Shown here: piece by piece, positions 27,126-48,500 of the stretch
Position numbering within the stretch: position 1 is the first letter of the stretch
How the letters are laid out: each line of letters starts with the position of its first letter
Source of the DNA: Entomortierella parvispora E1425
Taxonomy: Eukaryota > Fungi > Mortierellomycota
Assembly: GCA_020891255.1 (NCBI GenBank)
Contig: BQFW01000008.1
Span: forward strand, 1,426,001-1,490,000
Length of the DNA: 64,000 nt
Direction: 5' to 3'
Program-made: the position numbers and the translations under genes
The notes under the pieces: model-generated
The model's input: the letters and a program-made list of their open reading frames with translations, nothing else
Databases searched by the model: none
Told to the model about the DNA's origin: nothing

Positions 27126-30100
27126 ATGGTTTACGCACTTCGCAACCGAGACGCCAAGGGCGTCAAGTCTACAGGCCAAACCCCTCACACTACAGTAAAG
27201 AAACAAATCACCAAAAAGAAAATGACCAACACCAAGAGTGCCGAGGGCCCTTCAGCTTCGACTGCAAAGCCAGATGGAGGCACGATCTTGCCCATTGACG
27301 CAAAGGATACGCACAAAAAGCACATTCCCGATGGCAAGGACCACCATATTGTGGAGCAAGATGGCCGTGATCGTCACCACATCTGGTACGAAGACTTTGT
27401 GCCGGGCAAGGATGTTTCCAAGGGTCATCATAAGGGAGGAGCCGTGGCCAGCCACGCTGACATTCCCGCGCCAGGCCCTCAAGCTCGTGGCCGTCGTGGC
27501 TCTGCCTCCAAGAAAGAGTCCCACTCGACCGCCGCTTCCTACGTTCATCCCGCGCCCCTTGTGATCCAGGTCGACCATTCCCACAAGAAGCACGCCTTGG
27601 ATGGAAAGGATCACCACGTCGTCGAGGCTGACGGACGTGACCATCACCATATTCGCTACAGCGAGTCGTCTTCGTCCTCGAGCGAGCACCTGGCCTCAAG
27701 CAAGGCACACAAGACAACGGCCCACTCCGATGCTGCCTCAGCTTCCCATGCCGCCACTGCTCACTCCACCGCTGCCACAAAGACCCACACTCCTCTCCAC
27801 GGGGTTGGATCCACAGTCGGGCACGGTCAACAGGCCACTACCCGCCACTATGAGGCTACAGACACCGTCACCACCACGACCACCACGACGACCAAGCTCG
27901 GAGAGGAGCACCCTCATCGTCCTCACACCAAGGACGAGGGTGCCATTCGTCTTTTGGCCCAAAAGTCTCAACATGATCGTGCCAAGGCCCGTGAGGCTAT
28001 CCTGTCCTTGGACGGGGATGTGATTCAGCTCCAAAAGTTGCTCCACGACAAAGAGTTGGCCCTCCGCAAGGCCGAGTCGCGCTCGGATGAGTTGCAGCAC
28101 CGGACCACGATCCATACCGAGACCTTGACCAAGGAGGTCCACGAGTTGGAGACCACGATCCGGGATCTACGTTCGCATTTGAAACAGAAGGAGGAGGCCC
28201 TGAAGGCCACTCATCACCAGGTCCAAAAGTTGTCTACGGACAACAAGAAGGAGCACGAGAAGGCCGAACAGCAGTCTCACAAGGTCCAGAAGGATTTGGC
28301 CATCGCCAACTCTCAGCGCGAGAAGCTCGCTCGGCAGATTCAAGAACTAACGATGACCCTGCATGATCGCGAGCAGACTCTCAAGACCACCCAGTCCACG
28401 GTCAAGAGTCTGGAAAAGGCCACTAGCTCTCAGTCCAAGGAGACCCAAAAGCTGAGCTATGAACTCATGGCCATGAAAATGAGTATGGCTGATCGTCAGG
28501 CCGAGCTCAAGGAATGCCACGCTCAGATCAAGACTCTCGAAGGTGAACACCATAAGGTCGAGACCTTGACTGGTCAGCTGATGAACCTCCGCGGTCAGCT
28601 TTTAGAGCGCGAGAACAACCTCAAGGAGCTCGAGAAGGAGAACAAGACCTTGAACAAGGACCATGTCAAGGCGAACCAATTGACCGATGAGGTCAAGGCC
28701 CTGAAACACAACATCCAGGAGAGCGAGGGTCAATTGAAGAAAGCCCAGACGGCCGTTGATCATCTCGGAGCATTCCGCGACCGTGCTGCGACCCTGGATG
28801 TGGAGGTCCGTAATCTTCGCGACCAGGTCGACTTGCATGAGAAGCACGAGACTGATCTGGAGAATGCCTTGATGGAGCACGAGCACTGCTCGATCCAGTC
28901 CAGGGAGCTCCAGGGTCAAATCAGTCTCCTTCAGGCGCGCCTGAATGAAAAGAACTCTGAGATCAAGAACTTACAAAACTCGAACCAGACTCTTCATCAC
29001 AAGGATGAGCAGCGCATCTCCTCCCTGAAGAGCGAGGTCCAGATCTTACTTGGGGAGATGGCCGCCAAGGAACTTGCCGCCAAGAAGCTGAAGGAGAAGG
29101 CCGACGTGGACCATGCCAGGCTCAACTCGACTGCTGGCACTTTGAAGATTGAGGTCTTGGCCCTTCGTCAGCAATTGACGGACAAGAACGCGGAGTTCAA
29201 GAATGCTGAAAAATCCATGCAGGAGAATATGGGCCAAGTCAAAGACCAGAACCAGCACCTCTCGGTCGAGATTCGCCGCTTGGAGTCCATGATCGCTGCT
29301 AAGGACAAGCATGCAGCTGATCTTGACAGGGTCATCGCCAACATGAACCAGCAGGCTGACCGTGCTGACCGTCTTGAGGGCGAGGTCAAGCAGCTCCAGA
29401 ATGACACCAAGAAGGCCAGTAGGGACCTCGCTGCCGCATCCAGCAACTCTCATCAGTTGTCGACTCAGATCCAGTCTCTTCGTGGACAATTGTCCGAGAA
29501 GGAAAAGGAACTCAAGGCAGCTGACAAGACCGCCAAGGAGTTGGAGTCCAAGTCCAAGGAGATCAACACCCTCATCGCAAAGTTGTCTGGTGTTGAAAAG
29601 ACGTCTCATGACAACCTTGAGCGTGCTCGCCATGCTGAGGAGACCTCCAAGGACTTGAAGAGTGAGATCAAGTCGCTCGAGGATCGCCTTGGTTCTCTCC
29701 AGAGTCAGCTCCAGAATAAGGAGCTGACCTTGCAGCAGACCTTGGAGAAGTCCAACAAGGACCATGAGGAGGGTGTCTATCACATTGAGGAGATGCGTGC
29801 ATTGGTCTCTGAGCTGAGAACTCAAATGATGGAGGCTGAAAAGGACACCAAGGCCCAGATCAAGGCCAAGGAGGACCAGATCAAGAACTTGCAGAAACAT
29901 CTTGCTGGCATCGAGAAGAGCGATGCATCCAAGGTATTTCTTTTTCTTTTTTTTTGTTCATTGTAATTTATCAAAATTGCATTGACATCTAACCTGGTAA
30001 TTTCACGTTTCATCATAGATCGCCGAGCTCAACCACGAGATCCAAAAGGAAACTGCCCATTTGCGCGAGAAGGAAAAGACGATCCATGACTTCCAGCAAA

Positions 30101-30636
30101 AGATGACTGAGCAGACCCACGAGATTGGTCGTCTCAACACTGCCATTCAACAAGCCCGTTCAGAGCTCACCCAGGAGCGCAGCCGTCACGCTTCTGCGAT
30201 CCAAGAGACTGTCCAGGCCCAGACGAGCCAGTTCCAGCAGACCAAGAACAAGCTCGAGCACCAGATCACCGATCTCCAGCACGCCAGCCAGGCCCAGATG
30301 GCGCAGGCTCAACAGCAGAAGACCCAGAGCGAGCACACCATCGCAGAGCTCCAGGACCAGTCCTCCAAGCTTCAGAACGACATTATGACTTTGGAAACTC
30401 GCATGCGTCAGGAAATGACCACCACCAAGGAGTTGACCGATATGTTGGCCCAGCTTCGCAAGAGCATGAAGCATGACTCTGAGGCCGAGCTCAAGAAGTT
30501 GGACGAGCTCGAGCTCGAGATCAAAAACCGAAGCACCATTGTCGAGGAGTCTATCCAGGTCACTCGAGGTCGCATGGACAGCGGTGCCTTCTTGGATCAG
30601 AGCCAGCAGCAACACCAGCAGGTTCAACAACACTAA
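27126..30636 (+). CDS. Large uncharacterised protein (1141 aa): His/Thr/Ser-rich N-terminus plus ~850-aa coiled coil
   Basis: 2808-nt exon, intron 29934-30018 (GTATTT..CATAG), 618-nt exon in frame; strong C/G-ending codon bias; continuous heptads; TATATA at 26929-26934. Confidence 0.9.
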
Positions 30637-30766
30637 AGTGCCTTCCCTTGGCATGTAAATAGGTTAATAGGTTTTTGTCATCAATAAAAATAAAAAAAAT
30701 AAAAACTTGTGTATTTCTATGCATTATGTCCCTTTCGGCGACCTTCAAAAAGGATGTGGTATATGA

Positions 30767-33700
30767 TTATGAATCCTCTTCAGAGAACAGTGCAACATTT
30801 GTATGAATAGTACTCAAAGGAGGTCGCTGAAGACCTGTTCGAGCAGAGTGGCTGGCGCTTGTTCCGTCGCCATGACTGGAGTGCCCTCGCTGGCGGCTCC
30901 TACTTCTGGACCTCCTCCTAGCAGCTGCACCACCTTCCCTATCACGAGCGGTCGCTCGCATCGATCCTGTTCTAGAATGAGAGGGAGATGCAGCGCCTCC
31001 TCTGCCAGCAACAGACCCTGCGGTGGCCGATGATTCATCTGCAGACTGATCACTGAAAACAGGCGAGTGAAGCGGCCGACCCCTGCCTGGAGTGGCTCTT
31101 GTTCCAACCAGTCTCTCTACACCAAGCGCTCTAGGAGGCACCGCAAGCGTACGTTGGTGATGGGCCGTACGAAATGCAGGATTCTGAGGCGTTGCAAGAG
31201 ATGAATGGATTTGACTTTGACTCTGTCGCGTTAGAAGTGCTCGGTCAGCACCAAGAAGGTCATTTGCTATGCTTTCCCGAGTCTTGTCCAAAATCTTGTC
31301 ATCCAAACTATCAATGCCGCCGCCAGTCCCGTCTTCATCTGCACTGTATATTCCTCTTCCATCATTGTTCACAGTCGTCTCGTCATCGTCTTCGTAATGA
31401 GACCCTTCTTCCTCCCATTCATCAAGCTCTTCTTCGTCCTCGATACCATCGTCTACAGCTCCATAAGTACCCCCAAGTCTAAACAATCGCAATCGCCTCT
31501 CGCGCAAAAGTCTTTGTTGGCGCTCTTTAGCCCGCTGCCGTTTCCGGCTCTCCTTCTTTTCCCTGGCCTCCCACGCGAGAAGTCGTTTCAAGGTTTGGTC
31601 GCAAGAATCTGTGAGAATCCTGAACTGCTTGGAATACTCGATTAGGTGTTGCCAGTGCACGGCTGCGATGGTCACGGTACCATCTGGATTGCTCCGATGG
31701 ATCGTGCTGAATGACAACGGGGTGTTTGCTGGCGATTGGCGATGAGAGCTATTGCGACCTTGTGCCGACGAGCCTGTCGGTGCCGAAATCCCTGCGGCAG
31801 CAGCAGCAGCAGAAGCGGGCCATGCAGTGATGCTGAATTGTGAGCTAGACTGAGAGGATGAGCCAGTTCCATGGTAGGTGCCTGTTGATTCCACATTCAT
31901 GTATGACCGTGCTTTCGCTATGGAATGCCTGTGGATGGAGCTCGTAGAAGTGACATCACGCGAAATAGATGGGCTCAAATACGAAGAGTCTGTATCGTCC
32001 TCTTTCTCCAGGTACTCTAGAATACTCTCGGAATTGGACTCTACAGCCACTTTTGGAGTTGTGACCACATCCTTGCCCTGCAAAACATTGCCGCCTCCGT
32101 CGTAATCCACTCCAAGAACTTTTCGCAACAGCATATCGAAGTCGCGCGATACCTGAATCAGGTTCCGGAGACTGCCCTGACAGGATTTTGGTTGGGCCCC
32201 GTCCACTCCATCAGTTCCTGTGGCTACTGATTGAGAGACGAGACTTTGCAGCCTCTGCATTCGCTCTGCATGGAGAACATCGTCGCTTGAAGACTCGTTC
32301 CGACTACCCATACCGTCGTCCGTTTCTCCTTGCTCCGGGTCTTGTTCACTGGGCGACTGTACTAGTCGGTCTCCATGCTCGAGAAACCTCTCACTTCTAC
32401 GCAGTTGGGTTTGGACCACATGCCTACGCATCTTTTTGCTTAAAAGTTCAGACACTAAGGACGCCAGAAACGTCAACGTGACAATACCGACCAAGCAATA
32501 GGCAAGGAAGAGAGATTGCCCCGCCAATGTCGACGGTACCAAATCACCATATCCAATAGTTGAGAAAGCAACGAAACTGAAATACATGGCCATTCCAAAA
32601 CTCCATCCCTCGAGTGACTGAAAGACCGCGGCTCCAATTAACCAAAAGGACATAAACAGCAAAAAGCTGAAACGGAGTCGTCGGTTGTATTCCTCTATGC
32701 TCTCCTCATGCGCCAGTTGTTTGTCTGCCTCGCGCTGCTCTTTGGCTGTTGGTTGCACCTCTGCGATCCGCGAAAAAGATTCAGCCCTTCGCCATCCCAA
32801 GGCACGACCCGTGGCCCTGTAAATATACTTGATGGCCCAGAGTACGAGCCCAAGGAACGACCTATGGCGTGGGATACTTGATAGGGATCCCGTCTTTTCT
32901 TTGTTCCTGGTTTGCGTGGCAGATGTGGTGTTTTGAACCTCTTGATCACTATTCCTGTTTTCGTTGAATATATCGTCGATAGCCTTCCCAAAGGCCGCGC
33001 TACCATGCGTAGGGGAGCTTGCCGACCGTGTCATTCCGATTATATGATGGTCCTTCGCTTCATCCTGGTCTGGCGAAGGCCCGGTTGCAAAAAGAGAGCT
33101 CAGAAAATCACCCGATGGGGCCTCGGTCGTACCACTCTTTTTCTGGTTGTCTTCGCTGGGGTTGCCGTTTTCGTTCCCAAAATGACCAGAGAGTCGCTTA
33201 CTGCTTCCGTGGATTGTAAAGTGTTTTGGTAGAATAGAAAAATAATGAGATCGATTGTTTTGACTGGGATCCAGCATGGATGCTCCGTTTGTCAAGGCTA
33301 GTTGCCTCAAGGTTTCCTTGACTCGTCTCCGTTTTTCTTTTTCACGCAATCGCTCTTCTCTCCTTTCACGTCGGCGGGCTTCTCTCTTCAGCTTACGCTC
33401 CTTGGCTCTCAAGGCGAATTGGTGATGTAGGTCCTCTAGGATAACGTAGCGAATCGCGTTGACGGCCATGGCTAATTTTTCAGTTCCATGGTTAAGAACG
33501 AATCGTCAGAATGATTTATCACTGCGAGTTTTTCTTGCTTGCCAGAAAAAAAAAGGAAAAAGACAATATTGACAGTTTGACACTTACCAAAAAGAACAAT
33601 GCCTCCAGCGCCATAAAAGACGACAAATACCCGACCAGCTGAAGTCTCTGGGACCGTGTTACCAAATCCAATGGTGGTAATGGTCACCATCACAAAAAAT

Positions 33701-35100
33701 CTATCGTAAGTTGGAGCAAGATTCATGAGTTTTCAATCCTGCACATTCTTGAGCATTGACGAGCTGCGATGCCTCAATACTCTTACAGTGATTTGAGGAA
33801 TGTCCATTTCTCAATCCAAATAAAGATCAAAGCTCCAATGGCCAAGTAGAAACATAGCGACATTGCCTCCGCAATCAGAATACGCTGCTTGTGGGTGACA
33901 CCGGAACCATGGAGACGAAAGTGTGGAGTCCTGTAGATATCAATCGACAGCATCACAGTCGCAGACATCGAAAAAACCATCGACGCCACCATGGTCCAAA
34001 ATCTATGTTCAAGAACAGAAATCGAAAACGACGCGCGAAATTAGATATTTACAGTCCATTTTCCGCTGGCAAAAGCTGTTTGCTGGTAGTTACCCTTCCA
34101 TATAAACGTAACCCTTGGACTGTGGATATTTTAGACAAAACGGAACAATCACCCCAACGCACAAAAAGTCTGATCGACGACGAGCTTTATGTTAATATAT
34201 TCTCCTCGTGATAACCCATCTGCAATTAGAACATCAGTTCATCTCTTTTCTACATACCTTGAAGAGAAGCTGCGATGAGGCTTAAAACAACGCTGTGCCA
34301 GACATGCCTTTCTAGAAATCGAGATAGCACACAAATGTTGCAAAGGATGGCCATTACAAGAGCACCAATGACCATAGCGCTCATCCAGTTGGGAACAGAA
34401 ATCTCCTGCGGATCACTCCAGACCTTTGTCGCCGGATTGAATCTAATTTTTGATGTGCGCGATTAAAAAGAGGGGTTACTAGAATCCGTTGAGTGTAACC
34501 ACAACCACATGCAATGCATTGCGGGATGATGACATACTCGGATAAACCGACCCATGGTGAAGTCAGAGATGGTACGTTGATCAAGATCGAAACCCGACAT
34601 TCAATCAAGGACCACAGGACTGATTAGCTCATTGCCCTTTAAAGGTCAAGTCGTTGGTCTATATGGAAATGCTATGTACTCACTGGGATGATACATCCAA
34701 TCGCCAGGGGCAATACTCGATAGTGGGACTCGAGCTCATTGATATCTGCTGGGACATGGGTCTTGAACCCTGCATGATGATGACCAAGGGTCGTGTCCTT
34801 TGGTCTTGTTTTTGCGGTTAGTGATCGAAGGAGGCCTAGAATCCTCCTAGACCGCACGGGAGGGGGTTGTTTCGGTGGATCTACGTTGTTCCCTCTTTCA
34901 ATGTCCCTGATAGCATCCGTCTCTCCTCCACCTGGGAATCCTTGTTTTAGGACGCGAGGAGTGCCGAGAGGACCATCGGATTCGCGCAAAATCTCTAGGC
35001 GTGGATCAAAGTCACCTGCAGAAGGTCGATGTTCACTCCTGCTACTCAGCGACGAGGCGTCGTCTGCGTTGTAGAGGGTCTTTGGCATCCTTGTAAACAT
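30767..35100 (-). CDS. TOK1: Two-pore-domain outward-rectifying K+ channel Tok1
   Basis: N-terminal TM block, pore 1 FFVMVTITTIGFGN, pore 2 YFSFVAFSTIGYGDLVP, long low-complexity C-tail. One intron acceptor appears non-canonical (see findings). Confidence 0.92.
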
Positions 35101-35679
35101 GGTAGATGCTTGAGGAATGAATGTCCGAGATGGAAGGAGCGGCGAATGGTCAGATGGACCCTGAGTTGCTTTTTTGGAGCGAGACTTGTCCTTTTTAAGG
35201 TTGACACATGCCCAGGGACAGAAAGCGCGTGTGCGGAGACAGCAAGGGGGAAGCGAATGGAATGAAAGAATGAGGATGGCAGTAGCAATGCCAATGAGGA
35301 AGAAACAATGAGGGTGAGAGTGGAGAGAAAGAAGAAGAACAAGGAAGAGGAGGTGATTACGCCGCCCTTCCCCTGCTTCGTGCCTCTTTGGCGGGCTGTC
35401 TCTTGGACCATTGGAAGTCGAAAGGAGAAAGGGATGGATGAAAAGAACAACCGCGGACTACAAACCTTGAACTAAGGGCCATCCTGTCCTCCCTCCCGTC
35501 TGCCCTCTCCTGCTCTTGATCGTTGAGCCAGCTTTCTCTTTGTGCACTGCTCCTTCATTTATTCCCGCATGCCTCAATTAGATACAACCGCAGTCATGGT
35601 GAACTCTCTGCTTTTTATTTTATATACAAGGTAAACGCTCGTCTTCATGAGCGGCATGTAGACCGTCTCTCTCCCGGTC

Positions 35680-37549
35680 TTACAAGTCGTAGATCTTGGT
35701 GTACTTGTCGGTCAAGTACTTCACATAGAGCGACGCATCCAAGGGCTTGCCAGTCAAGGCGGTGATCAACTCATCACCAGACTCGCGCAAAGAACCCTGC
35801 TTGTGGATGTTCTCGTTCAACCACTCCTTCAACACATGGAACTCGCCCTTGGCCAGGTGATCCTCCAAGTTGGGGATCGCCTCCTTGGCAGCGCTATAGA
35901 TCTGGACAGCATAGATGGATCCAAGAGTGTAGGTGGGGAAGTAACCAATAAGGCCAAAGGCCCAGTGGGTATCTTGCAAGCATCCAAGACGGTCCTCCTT
36001 GACATCCTTGCCCAAGTACTCCTTCATCTTGGCATTCCAGAGTGCAGGAACCTCGGCAACAGTGATGTCTCCTTCGACCAAAGCCTTCTCGATCTCGTAA
36101 CGGAGAACAACATGGAGAGGGTAGGTGACCTCATCGGCCTCAATACGGATAAAACCAGGCTCGACACGGTTGAAAGCGTTGTAGAACTGCTCCAAAGTGA
36201 CATTCTGGATGCGTTCAACAGTGGGGAAGGTCTCCTTCAACAGGGGAAGAGCGTGGGTCCAGAAGGGCTTACCCAAACCAACCATGCGCTCCCTATTAAA
36301 TAACAAGCGTAGGTAAAAAAATAAAAAAAAGGGTCAGTATTCTTGTCTAATTCACATTCAGCAGAAAAGAATTGAGAAAAACATGCTAGTTTCCGTACCA
36401 CAACAGGGACTGGGACTCGTGGATTCCGAGAGACAAGGCCTGGGAGACGGGGAGATCGCGGTACTCCTTGCTGCGACCCTGCTCATAGAGGGAGTGACCA
36501 GTCTCGTGGATGGTACCGGTGATACCCTCCTGGAGGTCGTTGATGGTGTAACGGGTAGTCATACGGACATCGGTAGGGTGGGCACCACCGGTGAAGGGAT
36601 GGGTCGAGACATCCAAACGACCGCAGTCGGTATCAAATCCAATGTCCTTGGACAGACGATGCGAGTACTCGGTCTGCTTCTGGACATCAAAGTCGCCCTT
36701 GATGGCGCTGTTGTCGTGCTGGAAGTTCTTTTCGGTGATCTTGGCAATCAAAGGCACCAAGTTTGTCTTCAAGTCTCCAAACAAGACCTGGAGACGCTCC
36801 TCCTTGAAACCGGGCTCGTACTTGTCGAGCAAGGCCTGGTAATAACCCTTGTAGCACTCCTCGCCGTCCTTTAATCCGAGGCTGATGCGAGCCTTCTCGT
36901 TGATCTTGCGAGTCTCCTCGCAGAGACCAGCCTCCATGCAGTAGCGAACCTTCTTGCGGAGAAGATCGATCTGGTCCTGAAGGTAAGGGGCAAATTTGGC
37001 GTAGTTGGACTCTTTACGGGCTTCAACCCAGGCATGGGAGGCCTTTGACTGGAGAGCAGCAGCAGCCTTGACGAGCTCAAGGGGATAGACAGTCTCCTCC
37101 TTGTAGAACTTGCGAGAGAGGCGGATGTTGGCGAGCTCGTAGGCGTTCAACTCGCTAGAAAGATCCTGGGCCTTTTGGCGATCCTCAAGTTCCTGGAGAA
37201 TAGAGCCGAGGATGGGCGAGGTATCGAGCTCGTGGGACAAACCGGCCAAGACACTCAACTAGGTACAAAAGAGAAAGAGAGATCCGTAAGAATTAAGAAA
37301 CAATATCCAAGCAACATTGACCAGTAAAAAGTCCACCAAGTCATTCTAATAGGCATGGCCACTCTGTCTTACCTGCTCAGCACGACTCTCCGCAGCCTTG
37401 GCGGGCATCATGACCTCTTGGTCCCACTGGAGAATACCAGAGATACCGTGGACATGGCCAATCTCCTTCATGCGGACGCACAACTTGTCGTAAAGGGAGC
37501 GAACAGACTCGGAGGAAAGCTCGGCGGATGATTTGGCGAGGACGGTCAT
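35680..37549 (-). CDS. Family M32 metallocarboxypeptidase (carboxypeptidase Taq/PfuCP-like), 549 aa, 3 exons
   Basis: The M32 motifs are present in order: WDQEVMMP, HPF, DVRMT, HETGH (HEXXH), HESQS, IRIEADE, GCLQDTHW, GYFPTY. Exons 37549-37373, 37258-36399 and 36292-35680 sum to 1650 nt. Confidence 0.95.
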
Positions 37550-37686
37550 TGTAGATCTGAGCATGCACTGGAGGGGGGAGACAAGATTTAGGTGAGTGAA
37601 TGGAAAGAAAGGAGGGATGAATGTAAGCGATGAGGAATGAAGAGAGCGATCAAGAAGAACGTACGGGCAACAGTTGACAGAGGCGG

Positions 37687-37694
37687 TATTTATA
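37687..37694 (-). promoter_or_regulatory. TATA box (TATAAATA) upstream of the M32 gene
   Basis: Consensus TATAAATA ~140 nt before the ATG at 37549, followed by a CT-rich leader. Confidence 0.55.
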
Positions 37695-37984
37695 GCGAGC
37701 AAGAGAGAGAGAAAGAAGACGACGGAACAGCGGGTTGCGTGATATGTGTTCACAGGAAGGGTGTGGAAGGTGAAGAACAAAGGGACGGGACGTTCCTGTG
37801 CTCGGTCAAGATGTCCGTGTATGGAGCAGATGGCCTGCCCTGGACCACTGTGGGAAAGTGTCTCCAGCGAATGGGACGAGAGCAATGAATCGAAAGTCGA
37901 ATCGATGGCATTCCCGCCCAGATTTGGCAGGCAATTCAACTCGTTTTTTGTTGCCTCTTTCTTTCTGTTTGTGCGTCTGCTTCG

Positions 37985-38032
37985 CTGCTTGTCTGTCTGC
38001 TTGTCTTTCTGCTTGTCTTTCTGCTTGTCTTT
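37985..38032. repeat. 12-bp tandem repeat CTGCTTGTCT(G/T)T x4
   Basis: Four adjacent units, one substitution. Confidence 0.9.
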
Positions 38033-38409
38033 GTCTACAGTACATGTACTGTACATGTACTGTGCCTCCATCTTAGCCCGGCTTGGCTGCTTGGCATTTT
38101 CGCGCCGTCGATGTGCGCCGTCGCTCAAGATGCCCTTCACATTGAGTTTCTTTCTGAAAGACGCCCGTGCCAGGTGGGTGTCACCTATCAAGCTTCCACC
38201 AACTCGGAGATCCGCCTCTTTTTTTTTGGGTTCACATTTGCTTTTTTTTTTTGGTCTTGTCACGCCAAGAGTTTGAAAGCTTTTGCTGAGATGAGGCCAT
38301 TCTGTGCCAGAGTGTCTGCATAAATACAAACTCAACCCCAGAGCTTGCATCAACACGAGGAGGACACGTTCTATATTCATTTCTATGTGTAGGTTTGACT
38401 ATGTACCAT

Positions 38410-39659
38410 CTATCCACAGCTGGGCTCGACAATGCTTGCCATCGCCGCTTGAGAATCGCTCCCAGAGCTAAACAAAATCTGTGAGTCGTCCATCAGAGCC
38501 TCGTAGGATCCCTCATCATATTGCAGCCTTGGTACCTTGGGCTTTTCTGCCCGAATCTTCAGCACCTTTTCCTTTGCTTCCTTTGCTGACTTTGAGTTTT
38601 TACCACCAGAACTCTGAGAGGACTTGGCGATAAAGGTGGGCGATTCGCCCATACGAAGCAAAGGGTTCATGGCAAATGCACCTCCGCGACCTCCATGTTT
38701 GTTACCGCCGCTGATACTCGTCGACTTTGCCAGATCGAATAAACTCGTAGGCTCCGGGACTGAATCATCTTCCTCTTCCTCTGGTACGACCTGAGCTGCA
38801 GCCTCCACGACGACGCGACGGTTCACTACATCGATGGTCATGACCTTGGCCCGCTGGTATCCGCTTGCTGCTGCCGTGACTTTGTCCAGATTCTGACGCG
38901 CCTTTTCGGATTGATGTTGACGTTCTTCCTCTGTAAGCCAGAGATTTGGTCGATCTCCCGGAAGGACAAAATCCGTGGCCTGATCAATCACATGGGACCG
39001 ACGCGCACTGGTCCGGTCATACTCCAGCAACTTTTCCTTGTGGGCCTGCGCCAGGGAGGCCTTCATGGCTTCCTGTAGTTCTTCTTCCTCGGTCATTCGA
39101 CCATCCAAAGTAGGTGTTCCCCCATTCAATTCAACCCATCCACCAGCCGATCCTGTGGCGGAAGTCATACCTCCGCCGAGTTTGCTGGCGTATCCTGCTG
39201 TGCTCACGACGGCAGCCTTGTTCTTCCTTGTGGCCGTCGCCATAGCCTGCTGTTTTGCCAAGGCAGCCTTCTCCCGTTTCAACTCCAGCACCATGGCCTG
39301 TTGTTGATCTACAGAGACGACAGGCTTGCCACAGTAGGTACAGGGCCCTGGGCCTTCCAGTGCACAAATGATTTTTCCACAGTTTAGACAGTTGGGTGCA
39401 AAGACGTTCAGCTTGTGCTTGGTGGCTATTTCGTCAATGGATCGGAAAAGAATCAGTATGCATTTTTCAGAGAGAGCGATCCGGGATACTTGGTCTCCCT
39501 GCTGTCTTTGCTATTACCAAGACAGTAGCATGGCTTGCGCTCCTTTGCAGCATTGGCAGACTCTGTGGCTAGATCGATGGCGCGGATGGCCTTTTCGAGT
39601 TCAGAGAGAGGCTCTGCTGCGGCCTTTTTGGCTTGCTTTCTTGTTCGGTTGTTGGACAT
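38410..39659 (-). CDS. TRIP4: C2HC5 zinc-finger protein, TRIP4/ASC-1/Rqt4 homolog, 385 aa, 2 exons
   Basis: CYCL|ATKHKLNVFAPNCLNCGKIICALEGPGPCTYCG; KEKLLEYDRTSARRSHVIDQATDF; KVMTIDV. Confidence 0.88.
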
Positions 39660-40062
39660 TGAAGGCGAGAAAGAGAGGCGAATGGGGATGAAACGAAGGC
39701 TGGCAATTAAAGGACGAAGAATGGACTCTAGAAAGAGATGACGAGAAGAGATCCAGAGAGGGGATGAGAAAGAGAAGAAGGTATAAGAGCGAGAATAAGA
39801 AGAAGGATGGAGCCAATGGAGATGAATTCACTCTTTCGGCCACAACCGAGGTTGCTGCGGGGAGGTGGCTTTGCGCGTGTGTGCTCAGCCTCGTCGACTC
39901 AGATTCGCTTTCTGCCTTCATGCCTTCATACCCTCATTCCTTCACTCAACTCACCACGCGCTTTCTCTTTACTTTCTTTTTTTCTTTCTTATCTTCCTTC
40001 CTCACTGCAATTGCAAGAATAACTCGCCACTCTTCCTATCCTGGGAACAACTTTCATCCGCT

Positions 40063-42000
<1,938 letters not shown>

Positions 42001-42123
42001 CAATGTTCAAAAGAGAATCGAATGAAAGGTCATATTATACATATTTTTATACTACAGAATAAAAAAAAAAGTGAGAGAGGCAAAGAAAAGGGAAGAGCAA
42101 AATCAAAGGTAGGCCGCGATTGT

Positions 42124-42486
42124 TTAGCGCAGATCGTCATCACCGTCACTTCCTCCAATATCAATGTCCTCGTCACTATCCACCTCTTCGTCCGCAGCGG
42201 AGGTCTTGTTGGCTCCAGTAGCCTTGACTGTGGCCGAACCCTTCTTGCCACCCGTCAAGGGCGGAAGTCCAGCTCGGAGACGACGCTGTCGTTCAACCTC
42301 TTCTCCATCGCTTTCGGAATCGGCGGCAGTACCCGAAGACCGCTGGCTGTTGGTTCTACCGGGCACCGACCGAGGTGCAGTCTTGCCCCCGCGCATCGAA
42401 GGTCTCTGAAGAGCACCCTGCGCCTGCTGTTGCGACTGCTGCTGCTGCTGCTGTTGTTGTTGCTTTTGCAATTGCTGCTGAATCAA

Positions 42487-42519
<33 letters not shown>

Positions 42520-45500
42520 TTGCTGTTGTTGAAGAAGCTGCTGCTTCAAGAGCTGCTGCTGTTGCTGATGTTGCTGCAACTGCTGCTGGATCTGCTGCTG
42601 TTGCAAAAGAACTTGCTGCTGCTGCTGAAGCTGTTGCTGCTGTTGCTGCTGAAGTGTGGGCGTCCTCTGACCGGAGGCCTGTCCCACAGCACCGGCTTGG
42701 CCACTGCTGTTGCCTTGTTTCAAAAAGTTCTTCTCGGCCTCTTCCAGCTGTTGTGCTCGGAGGAGCTTCATCTTTTGACGGACTCCCTCTACATCATCAT
42801 CCGACTCTGTGTCGTCGTCCGAATCCTGGTAGTCCTTGACGGGGATCACGCTTTGACCGGGCACAGCCGAAACAGTCTCGTTGAGCATGGGCAGAATGGG
42901 TCTGCCAGTATGGGGCTCAACCCTGGGCAGGAACCCTCCTTGGAGTGGCCGGATCTGGGGCCCAGCGCTGAGCGGACCGCCAGGGTTGGCCTGCCCCAAG
43001 GAATGAAGCAAATTAGCTCCAGTGTTCAGAGTCGAAGGCGTCAACGAGGACACGGGGACAGAGGCGGGCAGGGTGGCAGTGGCAGTGGCAGTCGTAACCG
43101 CCGCAGCAGCAGAGGCTGCAGTAGCGGACGTGGCTGCGGAGGAGGCCTGGGCCACAGCGGATGCAGTAGCCGTTGCATTTGCAGCATTCGATCCTGACTG
43201 GCTACTCTCCACCTGATTGCCATTCAACATTAACATGCTGTTGAGGGTCGACTGGCCAGTGGCCTGGCCCTGCTGGGCCATAAGCTGTTGCAAGTGGCTC
43301 GATCCTGTGTTGGCCATCATGCCTCGAGAGAGCTGATGATTAAGAATGCCTGCTCGAGAGAGACTCGCGGTGGGGGGCGAGGTCGAGGAACGAAGGGCAG
43401 ACAACGAGATGGTCTTCATACGCGAAGCAGCCGCATGTTGACTCATGAGGGCTGAAGCCGTTACGGTGACAACACTTGGGGTCACCTTTTGATTAGGGAT
43501 CGGCAAGGGTGATGGGAAGTAGGTATCCAAGTTGTCGTTCAAAAACGGTCCAAGCTTGTGGTGCAATGAACAGGTGGCAGCCAGAGCTCGTGCACGAGCA
43601 AGGGGGATCCAGGTACCAAACAACTGTGAGCCCGGCTTACGAACACGAACACGTCCAAGCTCCAAACTCAATACGATGCTTCGCTCCTGCTCAGTTTCGA
43701 CTCCACCAGCAAGCAACAATGTCGTGGCATTCACATAGCCATTGTCGGCCCGACGCAGCAATCGATACTCTGCGCCTGGGTTGACCAATTTCGTGGTATA
43801 AAGGGCGACGTTATCAATCACCGTCAGATGAATGTTGGGCACGACAGGGTTCGTGGTAGGGATCCAGAGTTGATCGGCCGCAGGTTCCCGAGCGCCATTC
43901 TGAGCAACTGTTCCATCAGATGCAGAGTTTTGAGCAGCGTTTCCTGAACCACCAGCAGAGATTCCGCCTCCAGACGAAGACGTGGAACCATCGCCAGAGG
44001 CCATATCCATGTCGTGATCTGATGACCTCTTTGGTTTCTCTTCGAGCTCTTCAAAGTTGACAAAGGGGGTGGTGTCATCGTCCGCCGCATGAGACTTGCG
44101 TCTACTATCGATAATAGAGCTGGCGGCAGACTCGGCCTTGAGAGAGGTTGTCGACTGTGATTGAGCCGCGGCCCGCTGCTGTTGTAAAGCAGCCTGCTGG
44201 AGCTTTTTCTGCTTCATTGCCTTCTTCTTTTCAGCAGAATGTCTGGAAGATCCGCGAGATTCGTCTAGTAAAATTCCAAAAGAGTGAATATACAGCTCAA
44301 GAACATCCTCATCGTACAGAAACAAGGATTGGATACGTACTGGGGTTGGGGACATGCATAGGATTGTCCTGCAACATTTGAGCAATCCCTGGCAGCAAAT
44401 CGAGCCTATATTCATGGCAAAGCTCTCTGGCTCTAGCCAATCCAACCCTACAGATTAGAACAAATAAGAAGTGTCAATGGTCATTATTACAGCCAAGGGC
44501 ATATACAAAAAGGTGGCAATTAAACCAGTCCTTACCAAGCTCCTCGAACTTCCATTGGACCCTCCAGAACAATGTAGAGGGTAGTGGGCTCTTGGTTGAT
44601 ATCAAATTGACCATCTCCAATGATGGTTCTTGCGGCCAATCTCAGCATGGCAGCATTCACGAATCCCGCATGCTGGTCGTTATTCAGAGCAGGAATGACC
44701 TTTTTCTGGATCACAACGCCCCGGCCGTTCATATTGGGATTAGGAGGCGCGACCACACCCGCCACACGCATCAGCCTCAAGTCCGTGCCCGGCATGATGG
44801 TCTCGTACACCTGCAAGTTTGCATATACAGAGACTCGGACAAGTGACTTTGGAGGCTCCGCTGGGGGCTTTGGTGGAGCGTCGTCGTCGTCATCCTCCAG
44901 CTCTGATTCCGTCTCGTCATCTTGATCCACACCCTGCGGTGCCTCCATGTCCACATCCTTGTCAGCCCCCGTAGCAGTAACTGGGCTATCAGCACTTTGA
45001 ACAACGACAACGGGTGTCGTAGAAGAAGTAGCTGGGGTTTCTGGCTTGGGCTGTGATGAGGGTGAACCTGTTTCTGGTACAGCTGGCTTTTGCTGCGCTG
45101 CTGCATTTGCAGAAGTCGCGGCTGGGACAGTGTCTGCACTCGGTTTCGCTTCGGGGGTCTTTAGCGCTGCAGTATTGGCAGCCAGTGGGTGAGGTGCAGC
45201 TCCTGGGGTCGAATTGAAGCTGACTGACTTTGAAGATGGTGACGATGCTCCAGCGGAGGCGAAAACGCCACCAGTCGAGGCATGAAGAAGAGGGGACGTG
45301 GCTGCGTTTTGAAGGATTCCATTGGCCGTATTCCGAAGATTTGATTGACGATGGGGTGTGTGTCCGATATGCTTGGCATTGATGTTGCCCCAGCCCGAGA
45401 TCGAGACCTTGCGCGAGAGACTTGGGAAGAAGGAACCACCACCAGAGGAACTCAACAGGCGATCCAACTCCGAGACGGGCATTGACTCTGGGTTGTTGAG

Positions 45501-48500
45501 CTCCATCAAGGGCACATAATGATGGTCCTTTGTAGATGACAAGTCGTTCGAGTAATCTGCAAGAAAAGTCGATCCAAATTCGGGGTCGAAAATACTGCTG
45601 GACCGGGGGGATAACAAAAGCGAATCTGGAGGCATCAAAAGACCGCTCATCGACATCTTTCTACTCCGAGGCGATATTCCCATCAAGAAGGAGCTCGAAG
45701 TGGGGGTGGAGGCGAGGTTGCTGAACGGAGACACAGGTGTACCTCCGGCGGCAAAAGAGGACGACGGTCCTGTGTTGCGGACAGAAGGGATTGGCACTGC
45801 AATGCTCTTTTGTTGTGCTGGCGTCTCAGACTTGATACTGACGACTCTCTTGTCGTCCACATCGAGGTCGTCAAAATCACCGTGCATCATCTCCTCATGA
45901 TAGTCGCTAAAGTCTTGCTCATCTTCACTAGATTCCTGCATGGCCTCTCCGAGGCCTAAAGACGAGCCAGCGGCACCCATTGTCATGGCCAGTCCCGATG
46001 CTGACTGCGAGCCAGGGTGAGGAGGAGACTTTTTAGAGTCAAACGACAAGATCTTTGTCGCATTCAAAAGTCCATGCATTCCTGCCATGGTGTTGGCAGA
46101 GCCTCCAGAGTGAGTAGGCGTTGACATGGGTGATGAGAGTGAATTTGGGGTCGAGAAATTGGAAAGTGATTTGGGAGTTGGCAGACGGGACTCTTTTTGC
46201 ATATCCGGCATATGCAGATCCATTAAAACCAGATCGTCCTTGCCAAAAACATCATCGTCATCATCCAGATCTTCGTCCTCGTCCAGACTCTCATCGTCAC
46301 CTTCCTCTGACTCTGAGTACTCCTGATTGTTGGCAGGTCTCCACTTCGAAGGATGGATACTCGTGGGCGTTGTTGCCTTGAAACTACCAATCAGCACATG
46401 CTTTGACTTGAATCGCTTCACAGTCGGTCTGTTGGTAGGAAAGACCTTTTGCTTCTTGCGTTTGCGCATCACACTCCTGGACTTGTGCAGCATCGTATCA
46501 GAGTTTAGCTGTTGCTGCTGCTGATAAAGTTGATGCTGTCGCCTACGCTTCTGTTTCCGTTCAGACGAGTCGCCCGACATATCTCCGTCGTCATCGTCAT
46601 CATCATCGTCGTCGTCATCGTCGTCGTCCATTCCGCGGCTTCGTCTATCATCATCATCGTCATCTTCGTCCTCGTCCTCGTCCTCAGAGCCCATGCTGGA
46701 AAACCCAGAGGAGGAATCCAGGTCGGTCGAGGTGACGGCACTTGGGTTCTTGACAATGTGATTTTTGGCGAGATAATAATGGATTTTCCGCGAGTGACGC
46801 TCGTCGACGGCCTTGGCAAGGATGGGCGTTCTTGGGGGTTTGTGTTCTGATGCTCGCTTGAAATGTTGGGATATCCTCGACGACACGGTGGCATAGGGCG
46901 TCGCTCCACTGCAAGGTACAAAGACAAAGAGAGAGATACATTGATGCACACGAGCGGTTAGTGTATTGTACTCCCAGTGAGCGAGAAACCAGAACGAGAG
47001 CCTGGGGATCAAAGAGAAAACGGCAAAGGCAGCAATGACAAAGAGCGTCAACGCCAGACGCAATGTGGCGGGGGATGAAAAGAAGCACAAAGCCAGCAAG
47101 GGCTCCAACCCGGTCGACCGCCGAGAGCGACCCAGAGCTACAGCAGCAAGGTCAGAAAGCGAAAAGAAGCAAAAAGAAGCACCGAAACAGGCCGCCAAAC
47201 CCTATCGGTTGCCATGCACTCGCGGGCCCTCGTGGCAAATCAAAAAAATCAGAGACAGGGTCGGGACACCAAAGGTACCCAAACTCTTTTTTTTTTTCTT
47301 TTTTTTTTTTTTCCTCTCTTCTTTCTTGCTTTGGCCTGTCTGATCCCACTCTCTACAGCCCGTCCCTGCTCTGTTCTCTGGAGGACTGGCTGGGCTGACT
47401 ATCCAGGCACTCGATTCTCCTCTTTGCAATAAGATGTCCCTCTATCTGCCAGAAATTGCCGCTGTGGATAGGGACCCCTTCCGTAGAGCCGGGTAAATGT
47501 CACCACGATACTTGGCTCTGGGTGGACACACTGCGGATTTCACTCTCTATCTCTCTCTTTCTCTCTCTCTCTCTCTTCCTCCCCTTCTCTCGCTCATTAA
47601 ACCACCCTCGCGCAGTCGGTCACACGATGAGCGCGCATCGGAAGAACCACGTTGGGACAGATACCACGGCACCCTGAATTACACATGCAACAGGACCAAA
47701 AGTGAAAAAGGGTCCAAAAAGACAGATGCTCGCCAAGCATGCCGACAGATATGAACGATGACTGTATCCCCTAAAAGCAAAGGGCTACCAAACAGGTATT
47801 TTCTGTAGTGGAAGGAAAGTAGTGACGGACAAGAACCACCAGAAACGAAGATTCAGACCAGGGAGAGACAAGAAACCACTGACGACACCCTGATTGACTG
47901 ACTGAGTAGACTGACCACGAATAATAAAATACAGAGAGTGGATGACAGCCAAGCGCAGCTTGAAATCCAGATTAAGACAAAAAAGACATTCCCCGTGTGA
48001 GTGTTGGGTGGATCCCAACTCTAGGTCCCAAAGTTGATCGACAGAGAGTTGAGCGAAAGATAAATGCCACAGAAAGATAAAAGAATAAAAGAATAAAAAA
48101 GACCCGAAAGATGTGGTACGCTCCAAGCGGAAAAGTGATAGGAGAAGCTGATCATTCGGATAGAGACTCCAGAGCGGATGTCTCGATCTGATTCTGCTCT
48201 GGATAAAGATCGGTCGTGCATACGTCTGCGCCCCAAAAGCAGATCAACGTTGGGAACAAATGGTGGCGAGCGACGGATGCTGCGGGTTGTCAGGTGAAAA
48301 GGGGAGAAGAGCTAGCAGTGCTAGATCAGCACAGCCGTGGCCACAGCACCGTCCGTTGGAGAATAGCACCCCGGAATGAACTGCTCCCAAGCGAGCAACG
48401 AAGAACCCTGTGCAGATCCAGAGGAAGGACGGGGGGAAAGAACACAGTATCCACCCGAGAGAGGAAATAAGGGAAAGGTGCAGATCAAGTCCGTAAAAAG

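What the first reader, a model, noticed from the sequence alone, without database searches (positions are those of the whole stretch)
35680..37549. Intact, spliced M32 carboxypeptidase in a fungus: horizontal-transfer candidate
Seen: complete M32 motif set (HPF, DxRxT, HEXXH, HESQ, IRxxAD, GxxQDxHW), two canonical introns, a TATA box and host-like strong codon bias, so it is integrated and probably well expressed rather than contamination. It also has an apparent ~25-aa insert (CMEAGLCEETRKINEKARISLGLKDGEEC) before YQALLDKYEPG. Known: M32 is chiefly bacterial/archaeal, with eukaryotic members described mainly from trypanosomatids and some algae; I know of none in model Dikarya. Mortierellaceae host endobacteria and have other bacterial-origin genes. 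Inference: an old, domesticated bacterial acquisition giving a cytosolic peptide-recycling activity.
Basis: partly seen in the sequence, partly recalled or inferred. Interest (0 to 1): 0.75.

Follow-up and report, generated by a model that had tools for sequence, protein, structure and literature searches.

The report
Ordinary eukaryotic M32 carboxypeptidase, not bacterial import
The window carries an intact, spliced zinc carboxypeptidase gene of the M32 (Taq) family, but relatives in several other early-branching fungi, amoebae and green algae show an old eukaryotic gene kept by the Mortierella family, not a recent bacterial import.

Summary
Observation confirmed. A three-exon minus-strand gene (37549..35680, 549 codons, two GT..AG introns) encodes a complete M32 metallocarboxypeptidase. 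All six family motifs are present, there is a TATA box, and codon bias is strong (Nc 36 against 47-60 for other long ORFs in the window).

The horizontal-transfer reading is not supported:
- Orthologues occur in every sampled Mortierellaceae genus, in conserved synteny, and are already annotated as M32 in public genomes.
- Homologues also occur in Calcarisporiella, Basidiobolus, Hyaloraphidium, Allomyces, the ichthyosporean Amoebidium, five Amoebozoa, Heterolobosea and green plants.
- ML trees place Mortierellaceae beside Calcarisporiella (99/94) inside a eukaryotic clade (98/93).
- The nearest bacteria are nitrifiers (Nitrospinota, Nitrosomonas) at 40-45% identity. No endobacterium appeared among the 80 best loci kept.
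- Intron 1 sits at the same position and phase as in Calcarisporiella.
- GC content matches the flanks.

Caveat: an AU test does not formally reject a Mortierellaceae-plus-nitrifier clade (p 0.10).

The 27-residue insert is real. It is found in 47 of 47 Mortierellaceae sequences and in none of 15 others, and is predicted to be helical.

No paper on fungal M32 was found, and the literature understates how widely M32 occurs in eukaryotes. The scan's earlier notes do not mention this gene. Interest is low.

The parts
37689..37694 (-). TATAAA box, 145 nt upstream of the start codon
   Evidence: pattern scan; sequence read
37373..37549 (-). Exon 1 (residues 1-59, ATG at 37549). No hydrophobic signal-like N-terminus by eye
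37259..37372 (-). Intron 1: 114 nt, GT..AG, phase 0, after RAEQ. Same position and phase in Gryganskiella, Linnemannia and Calcarisporiella
36399..37258 (-). Exon 2 (residues 60-345 plus two bases of Trp346). Carries HPF, DxRxT, HExxH and HESQ
36857..36937 (-). Mortierellaceae-specific 27-residue insert (residues 167-193). In the model of the orthologue it extends one helix and adds a second helix and a loop
   Evidence: alignments (47/47 Mortierellaceae, 0/15 others); AlphaFold model of P0153 with pLDDT about 95 in this stretch
36494..36508 (-). HETGH (HExxH): two zinc-binding His and the catalytic Glu
   Evidence: invariant in the 63-sequence alignment
36410..36421 (-). HESQ motif, which carries the third zinc ligand (Glu)
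   Evidence: invariant
36293..36398 (-). Intron 2: 106 nt, GT..AG, phase 2, inside the Trp346 codon. Shared with Gryganskiella and Linnemannia. Calcarisporiella has an intron 7 nt downstream
35680..36292 (-). Exon 3 (residues 347-549, stop TAA 35682..35680). Carries IRxxAD and GxxQDxHW
35614..35619 (-). AATAAA, a candidate polyadenylation signal about 60 nt after the stop
   Evidence: pattern scan; not verified with RNA

Best explanation
The gene encodes a functional, probably cytosolic and well-expressed zinc carboxypeptidase of family M32 (carboxypeptidase Taq type). The two His of HETGH and the Glu of HESQ hold the zinc. The Glu of HETGH activates water, and the enzyme removes C-terminal residues one at a time from short peptides that fit its closed channel, feeding amino-acid recycling.

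In origin it is the local orthologue of a gene present across Mortierellaceae. That gene belongs to a eukaryotic M32 subfamily shared with other early-diverging fungi, Amoebozoa, an ichthyosporean, Heterolobosea and green plants. The simplest history is descent from an early eukaryotic ancestor, with loss in many later lineages. No named hit from Dikarya, Mucorales or animals was seen.

The Mortierellaceae ancestor added a 27-residue helical insert, and some genera (Linnemannia) amplified the gene in tandem.

Shown here: gene structure, family membership, motif integrity, fold (by a 91%-identical proxy), distribution, tree position, synteny, intron sharing, codon bias.

Inferred: catalytic activity, cytosolic location, expression level, vertical descent rather than eukaryote-to-eukaryote transfer.
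For: Family membership and integrity:
- PF02074 hits all exons.
- Eight solved M32 structures match at 1e-84 to 1e-107.
- All motifs are present.
- The AlphaFold model of orthologue P0153 has pLDDT 93.5 and TM 0.81-0.87 to the solved M32 enzymes.

Distribution:
- More than 20 Mortierellaceae genera or species carry it, some with tandem paralogues.
- Calcarisporiella and Basidiobolus.
- Pyxidicula, Phalansterium, Protostelium and a heterolobosean.
- Allomyces, Hyaloraphidium, Amoebidium, Cochliopodium, Willaertia and Sphagnum.

Trees:
- Careful ML tree: Mortierellaceae 100/100, plus Calcarisporiella 99/94, all eukaryotes 98/93.
- Expanded tree: a 95% clade made only of fungi, Amoebozoa and uncultured eukaryotes.
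- Fungal monophyly is not rejected (p 0.45).

Introns: one exact shared position and phase between Mortierellaceae and Calcarisporiella, and another between Calcarisporiella and Allomyces.

Host context:
- About 20 kb is collinear with Gryganskiella and Linnemannia.
- GC is 0.50-0.53, like the flanks.
- Nc is 36.

Bacteria: the best of 590 confirmed bacterial or archaeal loci are Nitrospinota and Nitrosomonas at 40-45%. No endobacterium is among the 80 kept.
Against: - The AU test does not formally reject a Mortierellaceae + Nitrospinota/Nitrosomonas clade (lnL difference 32.4, p 0.0996).
- The deep eukaryotic branches are a polytomy. Basidiobolus is unresolved in the careful tree, and Allomyces falls just outside the eukaryote + nitrifier group on a long branch.
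- The distribution in fungi is patchy, which eukaryote-to-eukaryote transfer would also explain.
- The amoebozoan sequences come from transcriptomes and could be contaminants.
- Absence from Dikarya, Mucorales and Glomeromycotina was not tested exhaustively, because only listed named hits could be inspected.
- No RNA evidence or enzymology is available.
- Kinetoplastid M32 could not be placed in the tree.
Confidence: 0.8

Rival explanations
1. Eukaryote-to-eukaryote transfer. The M32 gene moved between eukaryotes one or more times, for example from an amoebozoan or algal donor into the ancestor of Mortierellomycota plus Calcarisporiella, and separately into Basidiobolus, chytrids and others. 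This would give the patchy distribution without long vertical descent in fungi.
For: - The distribution among fungi is patchy.
- Fungi, Amoebozoa and uncultured eukaryotes are interleaved in a poorly resolved clade.
- Basidiobolus is intronless and does not group stably with the other fungi.
- Paulinella, a dinoflagellate and an ochrophyte nest inside the green-algal clade, so some eukaryote-to-eukaryote movement or contamination does occur in this family.
Against: - Fungal monophyly is not rejected (p 0.45) and is recovered in the quick trees (81-87).
- Intron positions are shared between Mortierellaceae and Calcarisporiella, and between Calcarisporiella and Allomyces.
- A grouping of fungi with Amoebozoa is what vertical descent within Amorphea predicts.
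Confidence: 0.14
2. A bacterium, possibly an endobacterium of Mortierellaceae, donated the gene directly to the Mortierellaceae ancestor, and it was later domesticated with introns and host codon usage.
For: - M32 is mostly prokaryotic (PMC6675120).
- The AU test does not reject a Mortierellaceae + nitrifier clade at 0.05 (p 0.0996).
- The stem branch of Mortierellaceae is long (0.35).
Against: - The ML trees put Mortierellaceae beside Calcarisporiella, inside a eukaryote clade.
- The orthologue P0153 is more similar to Calcarisporiella (54%), Basidiobolus (52%) and green algae (48-50%) than to any bacterium (44-46%; 38-45%).
- Intron 1 is shared with Calcarisporiella.
- There is no compositional anomaly.
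- Among the best 80 of 590 confirmed bacterial or archaeal loci there is no Mycoavidus-like or Mollicutes-related endobacterium.
Confidence: 0.05

Closest known systems
Annotated Mortierellaceae M32 proteins, e.g. Gryganskiella cystojenkinii BGZ83_003213 (P0153) and Linnemannia elongata AG-77 'M32 carboxypeptidase Taq metallopeptidase' (P0173)
   Same: - P0153 has the same 549-aa length, the same two introns and the same insert as the window gene, and is 83-93% identical per exon.
- The gene neighbours are the same: a 1400-1650-aa protein, SIR2, zf-C2HC5, M32, then a K+ channel-like gene.
   Different: - No identical protein was listed among the fetched hits; the closest fragments are 92-93% identical.
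- The window has one copy, whereas Linnemannia elongata has three in tandem at this locus.
Solved bacterial and archaeal M32 carboxypeptidases: Thermus thermophilus (3hoa/5wvu), Bacillus subtilis BsuCP (3hq2), Chitinophaga CHT (7a03), Pyrococcus furiosus PfuCP (1k9x), Deinococcus (5giv), Fervidobacterium (5e3x)
   Same: All six signature motifs are present. The predicted fold matches at TM 0.81-0.87 normalised by the model and 0.89-0.95 normalised by the target. Sequence identity is 31-37%.
   Different: The window gene is eukaryotic and carries introns. It has 27 extra residues between two N-terminal-half helices. It is about 40-50 residues longer overall. Its activity has not been tested.
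Trypanosoma cruzi metallocarboxypeptidase 1 (3dwc), the characterised eukaryotic M32
   Same: Both are cytosolic-type eukaryotic M32 enzymes with the same motifs and fold.
   Different: It scores lower against the Mortierellaceae protein than most of the bacterial enzymes do: 297 bits against 327-364 for five of the six solved bacterial enzymes (Deinococcus 299, Pyrococcus 285). This suggests it is not in the fungal/amoebozoan/green subfamily. That reading is indirect, because no kinetoplastid sequence was available by reference for the tree.
Green-algal and plant M32 (e.g. Chlamydomonas reinhardtii CHLRE_17g734900v5, Coccomyxa, Sphagnum)
   Same: They belong to the same eukaryotic M32 clade, at 48-50% identity, and contain introns.
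   Different: They form a separate, well-supported sub-clade (100/100). They lack the insert. None of the 11 Coccomyxa introns is shared. Many have N-terminal extensions.

Membership tests
Peptidase family M32 (carboxypeptidase Taq; Pfam PF02074) | Profile match above the curated threshold over the full domain | tested here: met
   Exons score 27.2, 223.3 and 269.3 bits against a cut-off of 25.1. Together they cover profile positions 5-489 of 489.
Peptidase family M32 (carboxypeptidase Taq; Pfam PF02074) | HExxH zinc site, with the third ligand Glu in the HESQ motif | tested here: met
   HETGH at residues 310-314 and HESQ at 339-342. Both are invariant in a 63-sequence alignment.
Peptidase family M32 (carboxypeptidase Taq; Pfam PF02074) | Accessory signature motifs HPF, DxRxT, IRxxAD, GxxQDxHW | tested here: met
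   All four are present, at residues 279-281, 289-293, 394-399 and 449-456.
Peptidase family M32 (carboxypeptidase Taq; Pfam PF02074) | All-helical two-lobed M32 fold with a small three-stranded sheet | tested here: met
   Tested by proxy. The model of the 91%-identical orthologue P0153 has pLDDT 93.5 and strands at 272-294. Its TM-score to solved M32 structures is 0.81-0.87. The window protein itself was not folded, because its exons were not joined.
Peptidase family M32 (carboxypeptidase Taq; Pfam PF02074) | Zn-dependent carboxypeptidase activity on short peptides; homodimer | not testable with these tools
   Needs recombinant enzyme.
Horizontally acquired bacterial gene in Mortierellaceae | Nests within, or is sister to, a bacterial group to the exclusion of other eukaryotes | tested here: not met
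   The ML trees place it with Calcarisporiella inside a eukaryote clade (99/94 and 98/93). Caveat: the AU p for the bacterial grouping is 0.0996.
Horizontally acquired bacterial gene in Mortierellaceae | Absent from related eukaryotic lineages | tested here: not met
   Found in Calcarisporiella, Basidiobolus, Hyaloraphidium, Allomyces, Amoebidium, Amoebozoa, Heterolobosea and green plants.
Horizontally acquired bacterial gene in Mortierellaceae | Highest similarity to a plausible donor such as an endobacterium | tested here: not met
   The best bacterial loci are Nitrospinota and Nitrosomonas at 40-45%. No endobacterium is among the best 80 of 590. Eukaryotic homologues are 48-54% identical.
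Horizontally acquired bacterial gene in Mortierellaceae | Foreign composition or lack of introns | tested here: not met
   GC equals that of the flanks. There are two introns, and one is shared with Calcarisporiella.

The most novel reading that the evidence does not exclude
Two modestly novel readings remain open.

(1) The Mortierellaceae-only 27-residue helical insert, together with the tandem amplification in Linnemannia, marks a functional shift of the enzyme (altered oligomer, gating or substrate range) tied to the family's life on peptide-rich substrates.

(2) The whole eukaryotic M32 subfamily and the M32 of nitrifying bacteria (Nitrospinota, Nitrosomonas, Nitrotoga) are linked by one ancient inter-domain transfer of unknown direction.
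Probability: 0.25. Interest if true: 0.4.

Novelty: new member of a known kind. Interest (0 to 1): 0.2.

Why it matters
It removes a false horizontal-transfer candidate from the list for this genome.

As a by-product, it shows that M32 carboxypeptidases are much more widespread in eukaryotes than the trypanosomatid-centred literature states. [quoted passage not shown] Here they were found in five fungal phyla, an ichthyosporean, Amoebozoa, Heterolobosea and land plants. This matters a little for arguments that M32 is a parasite-specific drug target, and for the history of peptidases in early fungi.

No fungal M32 has been characterised in the papers that could be searched. The strongly codon-biased Mortierellaceae enzyme, with its lineage-specific insert, would be an easy first one.

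Tried and rejected
- NCBIfam gave no family for any exon.
- The ESM Atlas feature search returned only generic bacterial M32 clusters.
- The first word search, with exon 2, could not see proteins longer than 500 aa and so missed all full-length fungal proteins. It was repeated with the database proteins P0004 and P0192.
- No RNA run was listed for the locus, so read laying was not used and splicing rests on orthologue models and profile continuity.
- The look-up of the Chlamydomonas gene failed, so Coccomyxa was used for algal introns.
- Paper searches for carboxypeptidase Taq with Mortierella, for Peptidase_M32, and for carboxypeptidase Taq with fungal found nothing on fungal M32.
- A conserved disulfide or metal site in the insert was considered and dropped. 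Only the Cys immediately after the insert (Cys194, before [YF]KGYYQ) is invariant; the 'GGVC' Cys varies among C, N, A, Y, S and F.
- Contamination was rejected. The gene is collinear with about 20 kb of two other Mortierellaceae genomes and has host-type introns.
- Kinetoplastid M32 could not be added to the tree, because no sequence was available by reference.
- The position of the insert relative to the active site or dimer interface could not be measured, because model coordinates are not exposed.

Full report
WHAT IS THERE

On the minus strand, 37549..35680, lies a three-exon gene.
- Exon 1 is 37549..37373 (59 codons from the ATG).
- Intron 1 is 114 nt (GT..AG, phase 0).
- Exon 2 is 37258..36399.
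- Intron 2 is 106 nt (GTACGG..AATAG, phase 2, inside the Trp codon that follows HESQSLL).
- Exon 3 is 36292..35680, ending in TAA.
- The coding sequence is 1650 nt, or 549 codons.

Each was searched by reference, and the public orthologue P0153 served as the full-length proxy.

Pfam PF02074 (Peptidase_M32) matches all three exon translations. The matches follow one another in the profile and together cover positions 5-489 of 489. Exon 2 alone matches eight solved M32 enzymes.

The model is confirmed by the annotated 549-residue protein of Gryganskiella cystojenkinii (P0153).
- It aligns to the three pieces at 83, 93 and 91% identity.
- The junctions fall exactly at residues 59|60 and 345|347.
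- Its own introns, mapped on its genomic locus, have the same positions and phases.

There is a TATAAA 145 nt upstream of the ATG and an AATAAA about 60 nt after the stop.

Codon usage is strongly biased. Wright's Nc is 36.0 and GC3 is 0.72, against Nc 47-60 for the other long open frames of the window. GC content (0.50-0.53) does not differ from the flanks. There is one M32 copy in the window. Only RNA-level evidence is missing, because no RNA run was listed.

THE INSERT

Relative to all non-Mortierellaceae homologues, the protein has 27 extra residues (167-193, window 36937..36857), just before the conserved YQ/YD..LLD stretch.
- In an alignment of 47 full-length Mortierellaceae proteins and 15 others (four other fungi, an ichthyosporean, three amoebozoans, an uncultured eukaryote, three green plants, three bacteria), all 47 have it and none of the 15 does.
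- Only the Cys directly after the insert (Cys194) is invariant, so a disulfide or metal site is unlikely.
- An AlphaFold model of P0153 built on 63 sequences (pLDDT 93.5, pTM 0.92) predicts that the region lengthens helix 149-168 and adds helix 173-186 and a loop, at pLDDT about 95.
- The model matches the solved M32 enzymes at TM 0.81-0.87.
- The insert is a clean marker of the family. Its function is unknown.

WHO HAS THE GENE

A search with a Linnemannia protein listed full-length orthologues in every sampled Mortierellaceae genus: Linnemannia, Mortierella, Podila, Dissophora, Gamsiella, Lobosporangium, Haplosporangium, Benniella, Entomortierella, Gryganskiella, Lunasporangiospora, Actinomortierella and Modicella. 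Several are already named 'M32 carboxypeptidase Taq metallopeptidase' by JGI/NCBI.

Linnemannia species have tandem arrays. L. zychae has five genes on one contig. L. elongata has three at the locus syntenic with the window.

The window is collinear over about 20 kb with Gryganskiella and Linnemannia. The order is a 1400-1650-aa protein, SIR2, zf-C2HC5, M32, then a K+ channel-like gene.

Outside the family, the next best named hits are other fungi and then green algae.
- Calcarisporiella thermophila is 53% identical to the Linnemannia query and Basidiobolus meristosporus 49%. Against P0153 they are 54% and 52%.
- Green algae are at 48-50%.
- Four EukProt sequences close to the fungi are the amoebozoans Pyxidicula, Phalansterium and Protostelium and a heterolobosean.
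- One metagenomic relative lies on a contig with EF3, protein kinases, SWIB, RhoGAP and a NOX-type reductase, so it comes from a eukaryote.

The exhaustive HMMER search was justified because the claim rests on absence of relatives. Together with name look-ups, it added:
- Allomyces (three species, Blastocladiomycota);
- Hyaloraphidium curvatum (Chytridiomycota);
- Amoebidium parasiticum (Ichthyosporea);
- Cochliopodium (Amoebozoa);
- Willaertia magna (Heterolobosea);
- Sphagnum.

The fungal genes sit in ordinary eukaryotic surroundings and, except in Basidiobolus, have introns.

BACTERIA

A scan of one genome for each of 185,579 bacterial and archaeal species gave 590 confirmed loci.
- The best 80 are almost all Nitrospinota and Nitrosomonas/Nitrotoga, at 40-45% identity to P0153, followed by Planctomycetota, Myxococcota and others at 38-41%.
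- No Burkholderia-related or Mollicutes-related endobacterium appears among the 80 kept.
- The scan used two conserved peptide patterns, so it favours close relatives. That is what a donor would have to be.

TREES

Three ML trees were built, with the window's exon 2 and exon 3 pieces entered as separate rows.
- A quick tree of 108 rows.
- A careful tree of 74 rows (LG+C20+F+G4 PMSF, ultrafast bootstrap / SH-aLRT).
- An expanded quick tree of 86 rows.

All three give the same picture.
- Both window pieces join Gryganskiella (99).
- Mortierellaceae is one clade (100/100).
- Its sister is Calcarisporiella (99/94).
- These lie within a clade of eukaryotes (98/93), whose other well-supported part is the green-algal group (100/100).
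- The eukaryotes as a whole are sister to the nitrifier bacteria (100/95 against the other bacteria).
- In the expanded tree a 95% clade contains only fungi (Mortierellaceae, Calcarisporiella, Basidiobolus, Hyaloraphidium), Amoebozoa and uncultured eukaryotes.
- Allomyces sits on a long branch just outside the eukaryote-plus-nitrifier group (82).

The deep eukaryotic nodes are otherwise unresolved. Two AU tests were run.
- Fungal monophyly (Mortierellaceae + Calcarisporiella + Basidiobolus) is not rejected (lnL difference 2.8, p 0.45).
- A forced Mortierellaceae + nitrifier clade is worse by 32.4 lnL units but is not formally rejected (p 0.0996). I report this as the main weakness.

INTRONS

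Intron positions were mapped exactly from protein-to-locus comparison and placed on one alignment.
- Intron 1 of the window, Gryganskiella and Linnemannia (phase 0, after RAEQ) coincides in position and phase with intron 1 of Calcarisporiella (after RAKQ).
- Intron 3 of Calcarisporiella (phase 0, after GFNT) coincides with intron 1 of Allomyces (after GFDF).
- By my own rough estimate, with about 1,500 possible slots and only two to five introns per gene, such coincidences would each be expected about 1% of the time by chance.
- The 11 Coccomyxa introns and the four of Hyaloraphidium are not shared.
- Shared introns are independent of the tree. They tie the Mortierellaceae gene to that of another fungal phylum, and that gene in turn to a blastoclad.

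INTERPRETATION

The gene is a normal resident of the Mortierellaceae genome, and almost certainly a working M32 carboxypeptidase. By analogy with the characterised enzymes (Thermus, Pyrococcus, Bacillus, Trypanosoma), it should be a cytosolic, probably dimeric, zinc enzyme that trims C-terminal residues from short peptides. This rests on established knowledge of the family and was not tested here. The lack of a signal-like N-terminus (by eye) and the strong codon bias fit an abundant cytosolic enzyme.

Its origin is not a transfer from bacteria into this fungal family. It belongs to a eukaryotic M32 subfamily that spans Amorphea (fungi, an ichthyosporean, Amoebozoa), Heterolobosea and green plants. 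I put about 0.8 on this overall reading. Within it, I favour vertical descent with many losses over eukaryote-to-eukaryote transfer. Direct bacterial acquisition gets about 0.05.

A bacterial origin of the whole eukaryotic subfamily is possible, as is the reverse (acquisition by nitrifiers from a eukaryote). Either would be a far older event.

KNOWN OR NEW

The family, the fold and the chemistry are known, and the Mortierellaceae orthologues are already annotated as M32. [quoted passage not shown]

The T. cruzi enzyme scores lower against P0153 than five of the six solved bacterial enzymes do. This suggests a separate lineage, but it was not placed in the tree.

The window gene is thus a new member of a known kind. 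The only small additions are the lineage-specific insert, the tandem expansion in Linnemannia and the wider eukaryotic distribution.

For this locus the nearest public sequence is from Gryganskiella.

Noticed in passing
L001-L073 (bacterial loci): Nitrifying bacteria of unrelated phyla share one M32 subtype: Nitrospinota, and the proteobacterial Nitrosomonas and Nitrotoga. It forms a 100%-supported clade, with the proteobacterial sequences nested inside Nitrospinota, and it is the sister of the eukaryotic M32 clade. This suggests transfer among nitrifiers and an old link to eukaryotes, of unknown direction.
   Followed up: partly
L088:10001-18772: Linnemannia elongata has three tandem M32 genes (551, 549 and 553 aa) at the locus syntenic with the window's single copy. 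L. zychae has five M32 genes on one 167-kb contig, and L. gamsii and L. exigua each have three adjacent ones.
   Followed up: partly
window 27777-46823: About 20 kb around the gene is collinear with Gryganskiella cystojenkinii contig JAAAIG010000182 at 68-84% nucleotide identity. The M32 tree also places the window with Gryganskiella rather than with Entomortierella lignicola or E. beljakovae. The species label was not checked here.
   Followed up: no
P0242, P0034, P0049: The M32 proteins attributed to Paulinella micropora (Rhizaria), Polarella glacialis (a dinoflagellate) and an ochromonad nest inside the green-algal clade. This could reflect green-algal gene transfer into these lineages, or contamination of those assemblies.
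   Followed up: no
window about 37900-38100: Upstream of the M32 promoter, the frame translations show a short tandem repeat: runs of KDKQ in one frame and ACLS/FCLS in the frames of the other strand. This indicates a repeat with a unit of about 12 nt in the intergenic region. It was not examined.
   Followed up: no
L085:6001-7542: The Basidiobolus meristosporus M32 gene is intronless, although it lies among ordinary eukaryotic genes (Arf, WD40, Rad10). Its place in the tree is unstable.
   Followed up: partly
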